Sequence record: MK250019.1
Length of the DNA stretch: 64,000 nt
Direction: 5' to 3' (one strand)
Under the pieces are notes generated by a model. It did not search any database. It worked only from the letters and a program-made list of their open reading frames with translations, and had not been told where the DNA came from. Both the position numbers and the translations under genes were made by a program. Shown here one piece after another: positions 49,382-57,015 of this stretch. Numbering within the stretch: the first letter of the stretch is position 1; the number at the start of each line of letters is the position of its first letter.

Positions 49382-50098
49382 ATGAAGCAAGAAAGAAAAA
49401 CAGTAGTAGCAGGTCCACATATATTAAAGTTTAATATATCAGATATTAATAGAATATTTTTTACAAGTGATATACATGCAAATCATGCGAATATTATAAA
49501 ATACTGTAATAGACCATTTACAGATGTTAATGAGATGAATCATGTTTTATTTAAGAATTTAAATGATTCATTATCAAGTATAGATAATGCTATACTTATA
49601 AATTGTGGTGATTTTATCTTTAGTAATGTAAGTACATATGATGAAATGGTTAATAACATTAAAGCTGAAAAAGTTTATAATATAATTGGTAATCATGATG
49701 TAAAAAACGTGTTACAGAGAAGAAATATAGTACCTTATAATGAAGAAAGTAAAGTATATTGGAGTACAGAACTTATTGTACAAATATATGATGATTATAA
49801 AGATAAAATACTTCTGCAATTTACAGTATCACATTATCCACATTGTGATGGACAATTCTTAGGTAAATTTAATATTCATGGTCATTTACATACACCAAAA
49901 AATATAGAAGATTATACAGGTACAGATGCGAATATTGCTAAAAAGTTAAAAGAAAAAGCAATGACATATGATGTTGGTGTAGATGGAAATGATTATAAAC
50001 CAGTAAAGTTAACTGATATATTAACAGGAAATTTAATTCAATATCAACTTAGAGATATTGATTTTAATTATTGGAAAAATAAAATTAAAAATATTTAA
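49382..50098 (+). CDS. calcineurin-like phosphoesterase
   Basis: FTSDIHANH, GDF, GNHD, SHYP, IHGHLH, DVGVDG. Confidence 0.9.
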   Translation: MKQERKTVVAGPHILKFNISDINRIFFTSDIHANHANIIKYCNRPFTDVNEMNHVLFKNLNDSLSSIDNAILINCGDFIFSNVSTYDEMVNNIKAEKVYNIIGNHDVKNVLQRRNIVPYNEESKVYWSTELIVQIYDDYKDKILLQFTVSHYPHCDGQFLGKFNIHGHLHTPKNIEDYTGTDANIAKKLKEKAMTYDVGVDGNDYKPVKLTDILTGNLIQYQLRDIDFNYWKNKIKNI

Positions 50099-50234
50099 AA
50101 TATTTAAGTGCTAATAAAGTTTATTGCAAAACTTTATTATCATTTTTTTGTATAATAATTAATTAATATTTTGATATTTCATAGTATCAAAGAATAAATA
50201 AAATACCTAAAATAAAATAGAAAGAAAATTAAAT

Positions 50235-53200
50235 ATGAAGGTAACAAAACGTGATGGTAGTTTTGAGAATTATAGTGTTTAGACAGTTAAACGTGCAGTT
50301 AGAGAAGCGTTTAAGTCAACAAAGACTAAATACTCAAAAGACACAATTTCGAATATTGTAAGTTCTATTACGCCATATGATGGCATTCCTGTAGAAGAAA
50401 TACAGGATCAGATAGAAACAAGTTTGTATTCTCATGATCAGCCTAAAGTTGCAAAAGAATTTATTCTTTATCGCAATAAGAAGAAGGAAATCAGAGAATG
50501 GGTTGCTAATAAAGAAGCATTTATTGAAAGATATAAAAATGCATCAAATACTGCAAATAGTACAATTGATGATAATTCTAACGTATCATCTAAGAACATC
50601 GGTGTATTAAATGCAGAAATTCATAAAGGTGATAATATTCTTGTAAGTAGAGGAATGATTACAAGAAAATTAAAAGATTTATTCCCTGATTTTAAAGCAA
50701 AACAATATCAAAAAGATTTAAAAAATCATATTATCTATAAGAATGATGAATCAAGTTTTGCTGGTGCTATAAGTCCTTATTGTGTTAGTGTATCTATGTA
50801 TCCATTTCTTAATCATGGATTGGAAAAGATTGGAGGATTGTCATGTCATCCACAAAATCTTGATTCCTATTGTGGTATGTATGTAAATCTTGTATTTGCA
50901 GTTGCAGCACAATTTGCAGGAGCAGTAGCAACATCAGAATTCTTGGTATATTTTGATTATTTTGCACGAAAGGAATTTGGAGATGATTACTATTTGCATA
51001 GTAAAGAATTCTATAAGATTGGTCCAAAATATCGTAAGTTACTTAATGAATCTAATTACTGGTGTAAAGATGTAGATACACTTAGAAAACATGATTTTGG
51101 TACAGATGAATTAAATAAATTGAGAGATGAACTTGTTTATAATTCGGAACGACCATTATCTGATGAAGAACTTAAAGAATATGAAACAGAACTTTCTAAA
51201 TATGATGTAGAAGGTTCAATAAAAGATTTTACAAATCCTATTAAGATTGGTGATGGTACAAGAACTATTGGTTCATGTATACAACAATTCTTCCAACAAG
51301 TAGTGTGAATTGAACGCACCCCTAATCGGTGACGATTAGGTAAACTCCATGTGAATTGCAGGGACTCTAAAATAATGAAGAAAATAATTTAATATTTTGA
51401 TTAAAAATATATACAACTTATTATAAATATTAAAATAATAGTATATATTACATGAAAATTACAGATAATAATATAGATGAAATAAAACATATGTATATTG
51501 ATGAACATCGTTCATATCAAGAAATTGCTGATTATTATAATGCAACAATATCATAGGTTAAAAATTTTTTATAGTCTAGATAGATAAAACGAAGATTTGC
51601 GCAAAGTAAATTAAATCAAGAATAGTTTGATAAAATTAAAGATTTATATTTAGGTGATAAAAAATATCCTGTATCTAAAATTTCAAAAATGTTAAATATA
51701 AAAGAATCAATAATAAGAAATTATATATTTGATAATAAATTAACAAGAAAAGAAACAGGAGATGAACGACGTTTAACAATACCATATGAAACACTATATG
51801 ATTTATATATAATTAAAAAGTTAGATAAAAATGAAATTTAGGAAAAATTAAATATATGTCGACAAACTTTAAATAAAAATTTAAAATTTTATAAATTAAC
51901 CAATAAGTATTCAAATTATACAGATAATGATATTTGTAAAATGTATAAAGATGAATATAAAAGTTTATCAGATATAAATAATATTACAAATTTTCCTAAA
52001 TCACGAATAAGATAGATTTTAATAAAAAATAATATATAGTTACGAGATTATCGTTTAAGTTAGATGACAAAAAGTAAAGCATATTTTGAGTATGATATGA
52101 GTTTATTAAATAAGCAATCTTTATTAAAGCGTAATTGCTATAGTTATTTTAAATCTCATATATCAACACAAATAAAGAAAGAACGAAATATGTGTGAATG
52201 TTGCGGTTCAACAGAAAATTTACATTGTCATCATATTAAACCATATTCATTAATTGTTAATGAGATTATAAAAGAAAATAAAAATTTATCTGATACTGAA
52301 TTATATAATGTAATTACTCATGATTCTAGATTTTTAGATACAAATAATATTAAAGTTGTATGTGAAAAATGTCATTATACGATATTTCATTCATACCTTC
52401 ATTATCAAGGGAATCGTGCAGCCAAGCCTAATAATTAGGAAGGTTCAACGACTATCGAAAACATAGAATAAACAAATAAGAGTTTATTTGAAGAAGTGAG
52501 TAGAGTACATAACAAGTGTTATGGAAGTGCATGGCAACTTAATCTAATCAATTAAGTTGGAGAAATAGTCTAAACGAATTTTTAATTCCCTCTATTACTG
52601 AAATGTAATAGTTGTCTATAGAAATATAGAGCAGTTATAAACTGAATATAAATTAACGATTTATATTTAATATATTTGATTCAATTAACCAACCCGCAGC
52701 AAGTCGTGGTCTGCAATCTGCATTTGTAAATTTCTCTTATTTTGATAAGCCTTTCTTTGAAGGTATGTTTGGGGAATTTGTATTTCCAGATGAAGAAGGT
52801 ACAAGACCTTGTTGGGAAAGTGTTTCATGGTTGCAGAAAGATTTTATGATTTGGTTTAATAAAGAGCGCCTTCGTACTATAATCACTTTCCCTGTTGAAA
52901 GTTTTGCATTGGTATATAAGGATGGAAAGTTTGTAGATGAAGATTCTGCAGATTTTGTTGCAGAAGAATATTCTCGTGGTCATTCATTCTTTACTTATAT
53001 GTCAGATACTGTTGATTCATTATCAAGCTGCTGTTTCGATGGTGATACACCATTTATGTTTGTAGAACCTCTTAATATGGAAGAGCATGGTGGTAATAAT
53101 GCATATATGGTTTCAACTATTAAAGATGCATATGAAAAATATAAAGATGATATAATTAATGTATATCATATGAATTTTAATGGTACTACAGGTAAATGTA

Positions 53201-55791
53201 CAGGTGAATGGGTAAATGCAAAATTTGTAAAAGCACAAGCTATTCAGGAAGTACGAATTTATTTTAAACCAGATGATTTCAATCCAGATGAGTCAAGGAA
53301 TGTAATGAGAGTTACGCCGGATCATATATTCCCTGTTATTGATGATAATGGATTTATTACAGATAAAAATGCATATTTATTACAGACTGGAGATCAACTT
53401 ATTTTTGAATATGCACAATATATGGGATTATTTAGAGATGAATTTCCTGATAGAGATCAAGATTTAGTAAAACGTGCTATTTCAAAAGTTGAAATTGTAA
53501 ATCTTGATGAACCAAAGGATTATTATTGTGTAGAGTTATGTGATAAAAATATTGAACCATACTTTTTGTTACCTAATGGAAATATTACACATAACTGTCG
53601 CCTTAAGAATAAGATTCAAACAAAGGAATTTAATTTTACAAATGGTAACTTAGGGATCAACTTGGGTCCTTTATGTGCTTAATTGCTAATCAAGCAATGT
53701 ATTAATATAGCGATATTAATGCATCGGTGAAGCCTAAACATAAGTTGTGAAACTATATGCATGGTAATACCGAACCAAGTTAATAAATATGTTATAATTT
53801 TACATTTATAATATATGAATAATAAAATATTTACAATTTACAAAATATCATTTCCAAATGGAAAAGTATATATTGGTTAGACATATCATTATCATTAGAG
53901 AATTAAAGAACATTTAAATGAAATGAAACATAGTGATTATAAATTATATAGAGCTATGAGGAAATATAATATAAATGAAAATAATTTTTCTATAGTAGAA
54001 GAAAATATTTTAACATAGAACGATGCAGATAATAAAGAAATATATTATATCAATTTATATGATAGTTATAATAATGGATATAATTCTACATTAGGTGGAC
54101 ATGCTGCAACAATAACAAAAATAGGAGAAGAACATCCTAAAGCTATATTAAATGATAATGAATTATTAGAATTAAGAAAAATTAGATATTCTATGAAATA
54201 TACATTTGGAGAAGTATATGATATGTATAAAAATAAAATGTCAAAAAGTGGTTTTTCAAAATATTGGCATTATTATACAAGACCTGAAATCGGAGAAGAA
54301 TATAATACTGATGAAGTAAATAAATTTTATAAATCTGATAGGAGAACAAGAAGAGGTATATTACATGCAAATTCAAGAAATTTATCAGATGAAGAAGTTT
54401 TAAATATAAGAATACGATATTTTGTAAATGGTGAAAAAGAAGATGATATTTTTAAAAAATATAAACACTTATATTCAAAGAGTGGTTTTAATAAAATATT
54501 ATTTGGATAGTCATATATGCATGTAAAAATGCCTATTAAAACAGATAAGTGTAAATAGAAATTACCATAGTTATCAAAAGAAGAAGTAATTTCATTAAGA
54601 GAACAATATAATAATGGTAAGTCTATTAATGAATTAAAAGTTGGAAAATATGAAAAATATTCAATGAATAATTTTAGAAATATGTTAATAGGTAGAACAT
54701 ATAAAAATTATTAATGTGTGTGGAGGTCATCCCCTAAGTGATGAGCAGGAGGAGTAGGGCTACTATTGATACGTAGCAGTATTTTAGGAAACGAAGTACT
54801 TTAAATGCCGAAATAGTGCAATGTTTATTAACATAATAAACATAAGATATGACCCGGACCATATAGAAATATATGGAGAAAACGTCAAACAGGTTCAAAA
54901 TCTGTAATAACATTAAATCTTAGTCGTATAACACAAGATTGGTTTAATAGTGTTAAGAAAACAGGTGTAACAAAAGAAAATGTAGAAGAACATTATGATG
55001 AATTGTGTCATTATTTTGGTGATATTCTTGATAGAGTATACAAATATCATACTGCATATAATGAACTTCTATGGGATATGTATGATGCTGGTTTGCTTCC
55101 GGTATATAAAGCTGGATTTATTAGTTTGAATAAGCAATATTTAACAATTGGATTAAATGGTCTTAATCAAATGGCAGAATTTTTAGGAATTACATGCAAT
55201 ATAAATCCTCATTATGAAAAATTATGTCAAACAATATTTGGATATATTAAGCAGAAGAATCAAGAAGCTGCAGGTATGTTTAACGGACATAAGCTCACGT
55301 TTAATACCGAGTGCGTACCAGCGGAAAGTCTTGCAATAAAAAATTATAATTGGGATAAAGAAGATGGATATTGGGTAAGTGATGATACAAATCTTTATGC
55401 ATCTTATATTTTTAAACCAAATGACAAGAGCTTATCAATTTTCGATAAAATTACATTACATGGTCGTGATTATATCGGAGATTTCTTAGATGGTGGTTCT
55501 GCGGCTCATCTTAATTTATCAGAGCATTTATCTAAGAAACAAATAAAACATATCATGCAATTTGCAGCACAGGTAGGATGTCAGTATTGGACATTTAATG
55601 TACCTAACTGCAAGTGTGAAGATTGTGGTTACATATCTAAAACACCATTTGATAAGTGTCCAAAATGTGGATCAGTTCATATAAGTTTATATGACCGTAT
55701 CATTGGATATTTAACTAAAATTTCGAACTGGTCAGATGGACGTCAACAAGAACAAAAGACACGTGTTTATCTACATAGTGAAAATATTTAA
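50235..55791 (+). CDS. nrdD: anaerobic (class III) ribonucleoside-triphosphate reductase; exons 50235-51306, 52679-53657, 54885-55791; intein 53032-53595; code 15
   Basis: ATP cone MKVTKRDG (TAG at codon 16); spliced exons total 2958 nt in frame (985 aa precursor, 797 aa after intein removal); joins read QQVVYSINQPAA, LSSCCRL, NLGIQTGS; C-terminal CEDC/CPKC and RIIGYL. Confidence 0.93.
51307..52678 (+). mobile_element. group I intron 1 in nrdD (1372 nt)
   Basis: 5' exon ends U, intron ends G; P1 GUGU|G pairs with CGCAC with U.G at the splice site; AAUCGUGCAGCCAAG element; P7 GACUAU (52450) with AUAGUC (52565). Confidence 0.9.
51452..52471 (+). CDS. intron-encoded HNH homing endonuclease with N-terminal helix-turn-helix-like repeats (339 aa, code 15)
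   Basis: 9 in-frame TAG; CECCGSTENLHCHHIKP...NIKVVCEKCH. Confidence 0.85.
53032..53595 (+). mobile_element. cis mini-intein (188 aa) in NrdD between the two Cys of SSCC
   Basis: starts CFDGDT, VTPDH block B, ends ITHN, +1 Cys; removal restores LSSCCRL. Confidence 0.92.
53658..54884 (+). mobile_element. group I intron 2 in nrdD (1227 nt)
   Basis: exon AGGGAU pairs with GUCCUU with U.G at the splice site; terminal G at 54884; P7 GGUCAU (54725) with AUGACC (54849); join gives GGG AT|T CAA (G-I-Q). Confidence 0.88.
53815..54714 (+). CDS. intron-encoded GIY-YIG homing endonuclease (299 aa, code 15)
   Basis: TIYKISFPNGKVYIG-TAG-T, R..EH, E..YI..YDS.NNGYNST.GG; 5 in-frame TAG. Confidence 0.9.
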
Positions 55792-55815
55792 GTTTTTATA
55801 ACCTATTTTATTTTT

Positions 55816-55858
55816 AATAAGTTATAACATATACTTTATGTTATAACTTATTTTTATT
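55816..55858 (+). terminator. intrinsic terminator after nrdD
   Basis: aataagttataacata...tatgttataacttatt plus T-run. Confidence 0.75.
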
Positions 55859-55922
55859 TAATAGTATTAAAGGTTTATCCTATTATTCAATTAGATAAAT
55901 ATTATAAATGAAAATATAATAT

Positions 55923-56984
55923 ATGAATTATAATAAAATTTATAATAATATTATTAATAATGCAAAAAATCGAAATAATATAAACAATCAATACTTTGAA
56001 ATACATCATATTATCCCTAAATGTATAGGAGGAACTGATGATGATAAAAATTTAGTAAAACTTACATTACGTGAACATTTTATATGTCATGAATTATTAG
56101 TTAAAATATATCCAGATATACAATCATTAAAATGCGCATTATGGATTATTTGTATTACGACATTAGAAGCAAAAAAAGAATATATAACAAATAATATAAA
56201 ATATAAAAATAATAAATTACCTATTAATCATAGAGTACAACATTTTTTAAATGATTTTGAAAAACATATTAATATATCTTCAAGAGATTATGAATATTGT
56301 AGAACATTATATTATATAGCAACAAAAGGGAAAAAACGAACTGTTGAGCAATGTAAAAAAATTTCAGATGCGACAAAGCATGCTATGAAAGATCCATCTA
56401 GAGTACAATTAAGAAGAAAAGGTGTATTGGGTAGTAAATTTTATTATGATTTAATAACAAATAAATCTTATAAATGGTTTCCGGGAGATCCAGATATTGA
56501 TTTAAATAAGTATGCGTGGGGTAGAGGAAAGAAAATGAGTTTAAAATCAAAAACATTAATGTCTGAAAATTTATCAAAATATAAAAAAGTATATTATTAT
56601 AATGATAATTTAAAATCATCTACATGCTTTTGTAAAGATTAGATAAAAATATTACCTGATAGTTGGCATTTAGGAAGAAAATTCGGCGGATATAATAAAA
56701 TGAAAATATTTATTATACCATTATTAAGAAATGTACATTTTAAATTAGTATGTAATTAGCATTTTATTGATAATATATTTTATCATATTAATTTATTAAA
56801 CAAATAGGAAATAAGTATAGGTATATTAACGATTAATGAAAAAATATTAAGTGACTTAATACAAAAAAATATTGATATTAATGATGAAAAATATATTACA
56901 ATAATATATAACAATATATTAAATAATATAAACCAAATTAAAACTATTAATAATAGCGTTTATTTAAATAGTGAAAATATTTAA
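55923..56984 (+). CDS. free-standing HNH homing endonuclease (353 aa, code 15)
   Basis: NYNKIY..FEIHHIIPKCIGGTDDDKNLVKLTLREHF; 3 in-frame TAG; ends VYLNSENI. Confidence 0.85.
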
Positions 56985-57015
56985 GTTTTTATAACCTATT
57001 TTATTTTTAAATTTT

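What the first reader, a model, noticed from the sequence alone, without database searches (positions are those of the whole stretch)
50235..55791. nrdD invaded by three different self-splicing elements clustered on the active site
Seen: group I intron 1 (51307-52678, HNH), a mini-intein exactly between the Cys-Cys of LSSCCRL (53032-53595) and group I intron 2 only 62 nt later (53658-54884, GIY-YIG). All junctions obey the U|...G rule with P1 U.G pairs, and the exons sum to 2958 nt in frame. Making one 797-aa enzyme needs TAG read-through, two RNA splicing events and one protein splicing event. Established: phage RNR genes are hotspots for introns and inteins; the triple nested load plus recoding is unusual. 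No nrdG activase is seen in the window.
Basis: partly seen in the sequence, partly recalled or inferred. Interest (0 to 1): 0.78.

Follow-up and report, generated by a model that had tools for sequence, protein, structure and literature searches.

The report
Lak megaphage nrdD: two introns, one intein
The anaerobic ribonucleotide reductase gene of the gut megaphage Lak-A2 is interrupted by two mobile group I introns and a mini-intein at its catalytic cysteine, a real but already familiar kind of arrangement in phage reductase genes.

Summary
The window is Prevotella phage Lak-A2 (100% identity). Sister genomes give natural deletions: Lak-A1 lacks exactly 51307-52678 and Lak-C1 lacks exactly 53658-54884. 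Most phage relatives carry an uninterrupted SCCRL motif where Lak has a 188-aa insert.

- **Intron 1:** its ORF-less allele scores 56-61 bits on Rfam Intron_gpI, above the threshold of 50.
- **Intron 2:** Rfam misses it. It has P1 (U.G), P10, a P7/J8-7 core, a GNRA-capped P9 and a terminal G, with compensatory changes in four lineages.
- **Intein:** the insert folds as an intein. Its +1 Cys is the radical cysteine (T. maritima C330, T4 C290).
- **RNA evidence:** animal gut libraries labelled RNA hold both exon-exon junctions with the intein retained. They also hold separate ORF-less intron contigs that close into circles.

The TAG is ordinary Lak decoding (code 15, TAG=Gln), not a special read-through. 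nrdG exists about 180 kb away around the circular genome. The elements lie in series and are not nested.

Precedents are close: T4 nrdD, SPbeta nrdE, crAss-like and Jug phages. This is a new member of a known kind. The clade as a whole is a strong hotspot, with at least 8 intron sites.

The parts
50235..51306 (+). nrdD exon 1. It holds an ATP-cone and the first part of the barrel, including Cys183, which aligns with T. maritima Cys125. It ends after the first base of codon 358.
   Evidence: TIGR02827 6-176 and PHROG 25611/487. Alignment to 4COI and 8P23. The boundary is fixed by Lak-A1.
50280..50282 (+). In-frame TAG at codon 16, read as Gln under the Lak code.
   Evidence: Conserved in every Lak variant while neighbouring synonymous sites vary. 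Code 15, tRNA-Sup(CTA) and RF2 are published for Lak. In Lak-C1/B a TAG stands where A2 has CAA in the conserved RGLQS motif.
51307..52678 (+). Group I intron 1 (1372 nt).
- P1: exon GUGU (51303-51306) plus G51307 pairs with CGCAC (51315-51319), with a U.G wobble at the splice site.
- P10: 51308-51314 pairs with exon 52680-52686.
- The last base, G52678, is the terminal (omega) G.
   Evidence: Precisely absent in Lak-A1. ORF-less alleles 97-99% identical in the core score 56.2 and 61 bits on RF00028, against a threshold of 50. An RNA-labelled contig starts at 51307, and a circle joins 52678 to 51311.
51452..52471 (+). Intron 1 homing endonuclease ORF: HTH repeats plus a C-terminal HNH, 339 aa with 9 TAG=Q codons. 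It sits in the P5 loop, and its 3' end overlaps the ribozyme core.
   Evidence: PHROG 8446/144 HNH endonuclease. TAG count. It is replaced by 17 nt in the ORF-less alleles.
52679..53657 (+). nrdD exon 2, with the intein coding sequence inside it.
   Evidence: TIGR02827 186-300 for 52681-53031. Aligns to T. maritima NrdD 215-329.
53032..53595 (+). Class 1 mini-intein of 188 aa (Cys1 ... TPDH ... THN), followed by Cys+1. It lies between the two Cys of SSC|CRL. The +1 Cys is the thiyl-radical cysteine.
   Evidence: Absent in 63 of 79 relatives, which carry an uninterrupted SCCRL. Allelic inteins of 164-353 aa sit at the same site; C1, block-B His and the C-terminal THN are invariant. The AF2 model's top PDB matches are all inteins. 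Profile hit to the gp41-1 intein at 4.6e-4. dN/dS is 0.15. SCCR 328-331 corresponds to T4 MGCR 288-291.
53658..54884 (+). Group I intron 2 (1227 nt), IA-like.
- P1: exon AGGGAU (53652-53657) pairs with GUCCUU (53666-53671), with U.G at the splice site.
- P10: UUGG (53662-53665) pairs with exon UCAA (54885-54888).
- P7: 54725-54730 pairs with 54849-54854, preceded by J8/7 UAAGAUAU.
- P9 has a GAAA loop. The last base, G54884, is the terminal (omega) G.
   Evidence: Precisely absent in Lak-C1. An ORF-less 312-nt allele lies in the DNA contig L099. Covariation: 97% of cells paired and 9 pairs changed on both sides, against 0 of 500 shuffles. It is related to introns in the Enterococcus phage EF1 DNA polymerase gene and in Herelleviridae terminase genes. 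The junction 53657|54885 appears in 3 RNA-labelled runs, and a full-length circle joins 54884 to 53658. RF00028 does not detect it.
53815..54714 (+). Intron 2 homing endonuclease ORF: GIY-YIG, 299 aa with 6 TAG=Q codons, in the P6a loop.
   Evidence: TIGR01453 group I intron endonuclease at 1.5e-6. PHROG 7168/314/5123. The stretch 53786-54700 is missing in ORF-less alleles.
54885..55791 (+). nrdD exon 3. It holds the Zn-Cys4 site and the glycyl-radical motif RIIGY. The Gly codon is 55705-55707, Gly770 of the mature protein.
   Evidence: TIGR02827 323-596. Alignment to 4COI 401-637, including the YMRIVGYL motif.
55923..56984 (+). Free-standing HNH homing endonuclease gene just downstream of nrdD (353 aa, 3 TAG=Q codons). 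This is context and not part of the split gene.
   Evidence: PHROG 655 homing endonuclease at 1.9e-39. TAG count.

Best explanation
The class III ribonucleotide reductase gene nrdD of Prevotella megaphage Lak-A2 carries three independent selfish elements. These are a group I intron with an HNH homing endonuclease, a mini-intein, and a second, unrelated group I intron with a GIY-YIG endonuclease.

Expression would run as follows.
1. The 5.56-kb primary transcript removes both introns by the standard two-step guanosine-initiated reaction: cleavage after the U of a P1 U.G pair, then exon ligation at the terminal G. This gives a 2958-nt reading frame.
2. Ribosomes read the single TAG as Gln, as everywhere in Lak.
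3. The 985-aa precursor undergoes class 1 protein splicing: Cys1 acyl shift, transfer to Cys+1, then cyclisation of the terminal Asn. This rejoins SSC-CRL and releases the thiyl-radical cysteine, giving a 797-aa NrdD.
4. NrdD is then activated by the distantly encoded NrdG.

The endonucleases spread the introns to empty alleles such as those of Lak-A1 and Lak-C1.

**Shown here:** the element boundaries, the family assignments, the intactness of the catalytic residues, and ligated-exon and circular-intron contigs in RNA-labelled libraries.

**Inferred:** autocatalysis in vitro, actual protein splicing, and endonuclease activity.
For: - **Identity:** 100% to Lak-A2.
- **Boundaries:** exact empty-site alleles exist for both introns.
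- **Profile fit:** the NrdD profile runs continuously across all three junctions.
- **Intron 1:** RF00028 scores of 56-61 bits on ORF-less alleles 97-99% identical to the A2 core.
- **Intron 2:** P1, P10, P7, J8/7, P9 and the terminal G are present, with 9 compensatory pairs across four lineages (0 of 500 shuffles; slid controls 25-42% paired). It is homologous to introns in split EF1 polymerase and Herelleviridae terminase genes.
- **RNA-labelled pig and gut libraries:**
  - A 2973-nt contig at depth 351 joins exon 1, exon 2 (with the intein) and exon 3 at 51306|52679 and 53657|54885.
  - Separate ORF-less intron contigs at depth 374-431 begin at 51307.
  - One closes 54884->53658 and another closes 52678->51311.
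- **Intein:**
  - Invariant C1, block-B His and THN.
  - Allelic mini and LAGLIDADG forms.
  - HINT fold hits at E 2e-7 and probability 1.0.
  - dN/dS of 0.15.
- **Catalytic residues kept:** Cys183, Cys475, Cys476, Gly770 and the Zn cysteines.
- **nrdG:** present in all 15 Lak genomes.
- **Code 15:** published for Lak.
Against: - RF00028 does not detect intron 2 even in its ORF-less form. Its P3/P4 assignment is by eye.
- The RNA evidence consists of assembled contigs from animal-gut relatives. It is neither raw reads nor from Lak-A2 itself.
- The libraries may contain DNA. DNA alleles lacking each intron exist, so a joined contig alone is not proof of splicing.
- The intein model is of moderate confidence (pLDDT 70.6), and neither NCBIfam nor PHROGs has a family matching it.
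- No biochemical test is available for ribozyme activity, protein splicing or reductase activity.
Confidence: 0.9

Rival explanations
1. The exon-exon and intron-only contigs in the RNA-labelled runs come from DNA, meaning intron-free phage alleles plus introns residing elsewhere. On this reading in vivo splicing is not actually shown.
For: DNA alleles lacking intron 1 (Lak-A1) or intron 2 (Lak-C1, L006) exist. The tool warns that DNA can be present in RNA libraries and that contigs cannot show transcripts. The longest contig in X17 is 82 kb.
Against: None of the 21 Lak-type DNA records examined lacks all introns. The intron contigs carry no flanking sequence and close on themselves exactly at the terminal G. 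One joins the terminal G to intron base 1, the other to a site after a U at base 4. DNA would not do this, but it is typical group I circularisation. Their depth matches that of the ligated exons. X11 holds both the spliced and the unspliced form.
Confidence: 0.12
2. Insertion 2 (53658-54884) is a mobile insertion but not an autonomous group I ribozyme. It might depend on a protein or belong to another class.
For: No RF00028 match at E<=10, even for the 312-nt ORF-less allele. The P3/P4 pairing is ambiguous in my hand model.
Against: - It has a contiguous guide sequence forming P1 (U.G) and P10.
- It has the canonical J8/7-P7 element UAAGAUAUGACC, P7.1/P7.2-type hairpins, a GNRA-capped P9 and a terminal G.
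- Compensatory changes support five helices.
- Its P4-P6 region matches the phiAGATE terminase intron, which RF00028 scores at E 1.6e-6, and a region of Moonbeam's split terminase gene whose ORFs are annotated 'group I intron'.
- RF00028 also misses the related EF1 intron.
- It lacks the group II hallmarks: no GUGYG start, no domain V, and it is only 312 nt without its ORF.
Confidence: 0.06
3. The gene is a decaying, non-functional nrdD overrun by selfish elements, for example with an intein that no longer splices.
For: There are three insertions in one gene, and the intein has lost its endonuclease domain. Activity has not been tested.
Against: - The frames are intact in 15 GenBank genomes, 6 IMG/VR contigs and 1 metagenome contig, despite about 15% nucleotide divergence.
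- Extein dN/dS is 0.05-0.08 and intein dN/dS is 0.15.
- All catalytic and intein-block residues are kept.
- nrdG is retained in all Lak genomes.
- The mRNA-like contig is abundant.
Confidence: 0.03

Closest known systems
Phage T4 nrdD (sunY) group I intron encoding I-TevII
   Same: A mobile group I intron with a homing endonuclease inside a phage class III reductase gene. It splices at the RNA level (PMC3653736, PMC1865063).
   Different: T4 has one intron and no intein. Lak-A2 has two unrelated introns (HNH and GIY-YIG) plus an intein. The Lak protein is the SCCR-type NrdD nearest to T. maritima, not the T4 MGCR type. I did not compare insertion sites with T4.
Bacillus phage SPbeta nrdE/nrdF ('lightning strikes twice': intron-intein coincidence)
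   Same: [quoted passage not shown]
   Different: SPbeta has a class Ib enzyme, one intron plus one intein in nrdE, and the standard code.
Jug jumbo gut phages and crAss-like phages
   Same: These are gut Bacteroidota phages whose nrdD, terL and polymerase genes are fragmented by several group I introns, homing endonucleases and inteins. Splicing is confirmed by metatranscriptome reads, and crAss-like phages also recode stop codons (PMC12880540).
   Different: They are different phage lineages, and Jug phages use the standard code. I found no description for Lak: the Lak papers mention only tRNA introns.
Lactococcus phage 949 and Clostridium phage c-st nrdD
   Same: nrdD is interrupted by an intron with intein remnants in phage 949, or by a putative intein in c-st (PMC3653736).
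   Different: These carry single or degenerate elements, and I did not compare their sites.
Group I introns of Herelleviridae (Enterococcus phage EF1 DNA polymerase; phiAGATE and Moonbeam terminase)
   Same: These are ribozyme relatives of intron 2. The EF1 3' core is 91% identical over 87 nt. A 40-50-nt P4-P6 segment is 86-90% identical to the L053 ortholog of intron 2. EF1 also carries a GIY-YIG ORF.
   Different: The host genes and host phyla differ (Firmicutes phages). P7 and several hairpins differ by compensatory changes.
Mini-inteins of known structure (P. horikoshii RadA, TFIIB, gp41-1, NrdJ-1)
   Same: HINT fold, Cys1, block-B His, terminal HN and a Cys+1 nucleophile.
   Different: Sequence identity is only 12-19%. 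The insertion site is the SCC|CRL radical-cysteine motif of NrdD, flanked by Cys on both sides.

Membership tests
Group I intron (intron 1, 51307-52678) | Covariance-model match to the conserved P1-P9 core at or above the curated threshold | tested here: met
   RF00028 scores 56.2 bits (L006) and 61 bits (G001) against a threshold of 50, over the full model 1-253. These are ORF-less alleles 97-99% identical to the A2 core. The A2 copy itself, with its 1-kb ORF, is missed.
Group I intron (intron 1) | U at -1 in a P1 U.G pair, a P10 pairing with the 3' exon, and G as the last intron base | tested here: met
   GUGU|G pairs with CGCAC, UUCAAUU pairs with AAUUGAA, and G52678 is the last base.
Group I intron (intron 2, 53658-54884) | Covariance-model match to the group I core | tested here: not met
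   No RF00028 match at E<=10 on the window or on the 312-nt ORF-less allele. There is only an 11.9-bit hit to P4-P6 in Lak-B3. Subgroup-specific models were not available.
Group I intron (intron 2) | P1 U.G, P10, a P7 with the J8/7 consensus, P8/P9, a terminal G, and helices supported by covariation | tested here: met
   The hand model rests. In the pair count, 97.2% of cells pair and 9 pairs change on both sides, against 0 of 500 shuffles; slid controls give 25-42%. The P3/P4 assignment remains uncertain.
Group I intron (both) | Exact exon ligation and intron release or circularisation at the terminal G in RNA | tested here: inconclusive
   RNA-labelled contigs show both junctions and intron circles. 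They are contigs, come from related phages, and DNA carry-over cannot be excluded.
Group I intron (both) | Guanosine-dependent self-splicing in vitro | not testable with these tools
   This needs a bench assay.
Intein (class 1, HINT fold) | Cys/Ser1, block-B TxxH, C-terminal HN, and a Cys/Ser/Thr +1 nucleophile | tested here: met
   C1, TPDH (His98), THN188 and then Cys. All are invariant across 9 allelic inteins.
Intein (class 1, HINT fold) | HINT fold | tested here: met
   The AF2 model has pLDDT 70.6 and pTM 0.72. The first 43 Foldseek PDB matches are all inteins or intein-like BIL domains, led by RadA at E 2e-7 with TM 0.54-0.59.
Intein (class 1, HINT fold) | An in-frame insertion absent from orthologs, at a conserved site of the host protein | tested here: met
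   63 of 79 relatives have an uninterrupted SCCRL. 16 carry an intein at the same site.
Intein | Protein splicing demonstrated | not testable with these tools
   This needs expression and mass spectrometry.
Class III ribonucleotide reductase NrdD (SCCR type, TIGR02827-like) | Glycyl-radical motif, Zn-Cys4 site, radical Cys in SCCR, second active-site Cys, and a partner NrdG | tested here: met
   The three exon pieces score 180, 162 and 269 bits on TIGR02827. No whole-protein score was possible because the spliced sequence was not submitted. RIIGY aligns with the T. maritima glycyl-radical (Gly621) motif, SSCCRL with 328-331, and Cys183 with Cys125. NrdG scores 148 bits on TIGR02826, just under the cut-off of 151.7.
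Homing endonucleases (HNH; GIY-YIG) | Catalytic motif and a family profile match for an ORF inside an intron loop | tested here: met
   PHROG 8446/144 for the HNH. PHROG 7168/314/5123 and TIGR01453 for the GIY-YIG. ORF-less alleles show the ORFs are optional inserts. Cleavage activity was not tested.

The most novel reading that the evidence does not exclude
The layered maturation could act as a conditional switch and not only as parasitic load. The intein has Cys at -1, 1 and +1, at the radical cysteine of an oxygen-sensitive enzyme. It could be held in a disulfide 'redox trap', so that NrdD is completed only under reducing, anoxic conditions. The endonuclease ORFs are rich in TAG (9 and 6 TAG codons against 1 in nrdD), which would confine their translation to the phase when the phage suppressor tRNA is active. 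Nothing here tests the redox idea. The TAG skew is shown, but what it does is inferred.
Probability: 0.1. Interest if true: 0.65.

Novelty: new member of a known kind. Interest (0 to 1): 0.42.

Why it matters
- **Annotation:** the 15 public Lak records seen here carry no gene annotation, and nrdD would otherwise be called as fragments. The finding gives a correct gene model for a core replication gene of the Lak megaphages.
- **Study system:** the Lak clade turns out to be a natural system for intron and intein dynamics. It offers empty and occupied sites, ORF-containing and ORF-less forms, and related introns 45 nt apart. It also has introns next to the radical Cys and the radical Gly, and public RNA data with ligated exons and intron circles.
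- **Biology:** it does not change what is known about how such elements work.

Tried and rejected
**Searches that found nothing**
- Rfam on the whole window at gathering thresholds found nothing. At E<=10 on 50000-57000 it gave only chance snoRNA and miRNA hits.
- This negative proved uninformative. The 1-kb ORFs break the model, and the related EF1 intron is also missed.
- Rfam on Lak-C1, Lak-B3 and Lak-B1 found nothing. RF00028 on the ORF-less intron 2 found nothing either.
- NCBIfam and PHROGs have no family matching the intein.
- An exact-pattern scan of IMG/VR for the ORF-less intron 2 junction gave 0 hits. The metagenome scan gave one, L099.
- The window's own assembly is not held, so I used Lak-A1, Lak-C1, Lak-B3 and G001 instead. 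G001 (61% complete) has no nrdG hit, which is uninformative.

**Method limits**
- RNAalifold on four intron 2 sequences gave a poor consensus, because P3 and P7 form a pseudoknot and the 5' half aligns badly. I used a hand model and a pair count on the 3' half instead.
- P8 could not be counted because the alignment there is not structural.

**Readings considered and rejected**
- *Group II intron:* no GUGYG start, no domain V, and too small.
- *Assembly artefact:* the same architecture recurs in independent genomes.
- *Translational bypass:* the exons are joined in RNA-labelled contigs.
- *A fourth element in the extra ~85 aa at the end of exon 1:* it has no intein blocks, is in frame, and varies in presence among relatives.

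I ran no complex prediction, because I make no binding claim.

Full report
**Identity and observation.** The stretch 50235-55791 is 100% identical to Prevotella phage Lak-A2 (MK250019.1 374100-379656). The other 14 published Lak genomes match in pieces. Read by table 11 the region is a row of fragments. Read with TAG=Gln it gives a 357-aa N-terminal NrdD piece, a 339-aa ORF, a 305-aa piece, a 299-aa ORF and a 262-aa C-terminal piece.

The exon pieces map without a break onto the NrdD profile TIGR02827. Exon 1 covers positions 6-176, 52681-53031 covers 186-300, and exon 3 covers 323-596. The 22 residues between the intein and the matched part of exon 3 account for profile positions 301-322. Every number in the finding is correct.

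**Boundaries from natural alleles.** Lak-A1 is collinear with the window but lacks exactly 51307-52678, reading GTAGTGT|ATTCAATT. No alternative register fits. Lak-C1 lacks exactly 53658-54884, reading GGAAT|TCAAAC. Both insertions are therefore discrete, optional elements at the predicted bases.

**Intron 1.** Rfam finds nothing in the window. That is because a 1024-nt segment holding the HNH ORF sits in the P5 loop.
- IMG/VR Lak contigs L006 and L057 (=G001) carry the same intron with 17 nt in place of that segment. They differ from the A2 core at 5 and 10 positions out of about 365.
- These score 56.2 and 61 bits on RF00028, against a gathering score of 50, over the whole model.
- The alignment gives P1 as GUGU|G paired with CGCAC, with the splice-site U in a U.G pair.
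- By eye, P10 is seven pairs between intron bases 2-8 and exon 2 bases 2-8. The last base is G.
- The ORF is an HTH-repeat plus HNH endonuclease (PHROG 8446/144).

**Intron 2.** RF00028 does not detect it. This holds even for the 312-nt ORF-less allele that lies in nrdD on a DNA metagenome contig, L099, which is one base different from the window's core. The case rests on other evidence.
- *Guide sequence:* UUGG-GUCCUU is contiguous. It pairs with the first four bases of exon 3 (P10) and with the last six of exon 2 (P1, with U.G at the site).
- *Core:* the ORF sits in the loop of a long AU-rich P6a hairpin. The 3' half has P7 (GGUCAU/AUGACC) preceded by the canonical J8/7 UAAGAUAU. It also has two to three hairpins between P7 and P8, as in IA introns, then P8, a GAAA-capped P9 and a terminal G.
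- *Relatives:*
  - An ORF-less ortholog sits at the same codon in a 58%-identical phage NrdD (L053).
  - The Lak-B copy is a second relative.
  - The 3' core of an intron splitting the DNA polymerase gene of Enterococcus phage EF1 is 91% identical over 87 nt.
- *Covariation:* on these four lineages my five helices pair in 97.2% of cells. Nine pairs change on both sides, against 0 of 500 shuffles. Partner columns slid by 1-3 give 25-42% pairing and at most one such pair. Four sequences is a small sample, and the structure was derived from them.
- *P4-P6:* this segment of L053 matches introns in split terminase genes of phiAGATE and Moonbeam. RF00028 scores the phiAGATE intron at 28.4 bits, E 1.6e-6. 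The Moonbeam intron ORFs are annotated 'group I intron'.
- *Open point:* my P3/P4 assignment remains uncertain.
- *ORF:* it is a GIY-YIG endonuclease (TIGR01453, PHROG 7168/314/5123).

**RNA-level evidence.** I laid Logan contigs of four runs on 50100-55900.
- *Ligated exons:* in a pig library on record as metatranscriptomic (X17), one 2973-nt contig at depth 351 runs 50184-51306, then 41 diverged letters replacing the first 41 bases of exon 2, then 52720-53657, then 54885-55760. That is both introns out and the intein in. In X18 the sequence following 51306 reads ATTCAATTAA..., the predicted junction.
- *Free introns:* in X17 the introns appear as separate contigs at similar depth (374-431). 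One begins exactly at 51307 and skips the HNH ORF.
- *Intron 2 circle:* another X17 contig covers 53666-53785 plus 54701-54884 and then continues into 53658-53695. This is a closed 312-nt circle joining the terminal G to intron base 1.
- *Intron 1 circle:* in X18 the intron 1 contig closes 52678->51311, a circle that has lost four 5' bases at a site after a U.
- *Second study:* X11, an RNA-Seq run from another study, holds the 53657|54885 junction and also an unspliced piece.
- *DNA comparison:* X19 (library type not on record) holds intron 2 with its ORF in place.

Ligated exons, free introns and circles at the terminal G are what group I chemistry produces. The caveats are real. These are contigs and not reads, they come from animal-gut relatives of Lak-A2, and the libraries may hold DNA. 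DNA alleles lacking one intron also exist. Against a pure DNA reading, none of the 21 Lak-type DNA records examined lacks all introns, and DNA would not give flankless circles.

**Intein.** In 63 of 79 IMG/VR relatives the motif SCCRL(K/R)N is uninterrupted. In 16, including all six IMG/VR Lak-type loci, an insert beginning CF... follows the first Cys; the GenBank Lak-A1, -C1 and -B loci read the same way.
- Nine allelic inserts, 164-188 aa or 353 aa with LAGLIDADG motifs, share invariant Cys1, the block-B His (TPDH in Lak) and the C-terminal THN, followed by Cys.
- Their profile hits the gp41-1 intein at 4.6e-4.
- The AF2 model (pLDDT 70.6, pTM 0.72) has only inteins or intein-like BIL domains among its first 43 PDB matches, led by RadA at E 2e-7.
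- Between Lak-A2 and Lak-B3 the intein has dN/dS 0.15 at dS 0.77, against 0.05-0.08 for the exteins. It is therefore maintained.
- The N-extein ends at the residue aligned with T. maritima NrdD Cys329, so the +1 Cys is Cys330.
- Aurelius et al. 2015 align tmNrdD 328-SCCR-331 with T4 288-MGCR-291, the radical cysteine. They show that C329A and C330A are both inactive (PMC4493059).

The catalytic cysteine doubles as the splicing nucleophile.

**The mature enzyme, the code and NrdG.**
- The spliced protein keeps Cys183 (aligned with Tm Cys125), Cys475 and Cys476, the Zn cysteines, and RIIGY with Gly770 aligned with the Tm YMRIVGYL (Gly621) motif. It also has an N-terminal ATP-cone.
- The TAG at codon 16 is conserved in all Lak variants.
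- Lak-C1 and Lak-B use TAG where A2 has CAA in the conserved RGLQS motif.
- Lak phages were described as using code 15 with tRNA-Sup(CTA) and RF2 (PMC6784885). The TAG is therefore ordinary decoding.
- nrdG is absent from the window. It lies at MK250019.1 12729-13310 and is present in all 15 Lak genomes.

**Clade picture.** Lak-type nrdD alleles differ widely in their load.

| Allele | Elements in nrdD |
|---|---|
| Lak-A1 | intein, intron 2 |
| Lak-A2 | intron 1, intein, intron 2 |
| Lak-C1 | a related intron 45 nt downstream of site 1, intein |
| Lak-B | four or five introns, intein |
| L099 | five introns, intein |

At least eight intron sites are used. One lies one base after the glycyl-radical codon. 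All but one of the additional junctions examined (the ~846 site in Lak-B1) have T at -1 and G at the intron end. The long forms encode HNH or GIY-YIG enzymes.

**Comparison and verdict.** Group I introns in phage nrdD (T4) are textbook or recently published cases. So are intron plus intein in one RNR gene (SPbeta, phage 949) and multiply split nrdD confirmed by RNA reads in gut jumbo and crAss-like phages. The Lak papers I could read mention only tRNA introns. This is therefore an undescribed but ordinary member of a known kind. It comes with an unusually rich set of natural alleles and public RNA support.

Noticed in passing
window 52723|52724 (site 1b); L002 2618-4021; L003 2618-4025: Lak-C1, all Lak-B, L017 and L099 have no intron at site 1. 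Instead they carry a related intron 45 nt downstream. Its 3' core is 73-91% identical to intron 1, and its HNH enzyme is in the same PHROG at 24% identity. The six exon codons between the two sites are fully synonymously recoded, including TAG for CAA. This looks like site switching, with target-site immunity or co-conversion.
   Followed up: partly
window 52895/6, 55319/20, ~55370-55384, 55494|55495, 55708|55709 (seen in L003, L004, L017, L057, L099): Five further intron sites are used in other Lak-type nrdD alleles. All but the ~846 site have T at -1 and G at the intron end. Two get weak RF00028 hits (29-31 bits). The long forms encode HNH or GIY-YIG enzymes. L099 carries five introns plus the intein. 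The 55708|55709 site lies one base after the glycyl-radical codon.
   Followed up: partly
window 51452-52471, 53815-54714, 55923-56984 versus the nrdD exons: TAG codons are concentrated in the homing endonuclease ORFs: 9 of 339, 6 of 299 and 3 of 353 codons. The nrdD frame has 1 of 983. This fits the idea of Borges et al. that recoding delays endonuclease translation until the suppressor tRNA is active.
   Followed up: partly
window 51311/52678 and 53658/54884 (runs X17, X18): Intron-only contigs in RNA-labelled pig libraries close into circles. Intron 2 forms a full-length circle, and intron 1 forms one lacking its first four bases. Their depth is similar to that of the ligated exons.
   Followed up: partly
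window 50990-51260 (exon 1 residues ~253-341): An in-frame segment of about 85 aa has no counterpart in T. maritima NrdD, in TIGR02827, or in many phage relatives. It is present in some relatives, such as L013. It has no intein motifs and looks like a lineage-variable surface insert.
   Followed up: partly
window 55923-56984: A free-standing HNH homing endonuclease gene (PHROG 655, E 1.9e-39) lies directly downstream of nrdD.
   Followed up: partly
L012 from 6285; L053 from 5057: In two non-Lak relatives the intein at the same SCC|CRL site loses its frame after about 120 aa. It may be decayed, or itself interrupted by another element.
   Followed up: no
Lak-A1 MK250015.1 209334-209571 (L094): A further RF00028 match (46.2 bits, E 2.8e-11) lies outside nrdD, so other Lak genes probably carry group I introns too.
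   Followed up: no
window 52917-52999: A weak Rfam hit to yeast snoRNA snR75 (25 bits, below its threshold of 40) lies inside the nrdD coding sequence and recurs in all Lak copies. It is a chance match.
   Followed up: yes
window 49382-50098: The ORF upstream of nrdD shows metallophosphoesterase-like motifs (DIH...GD...GNHD) by eye.
   Followed up: no
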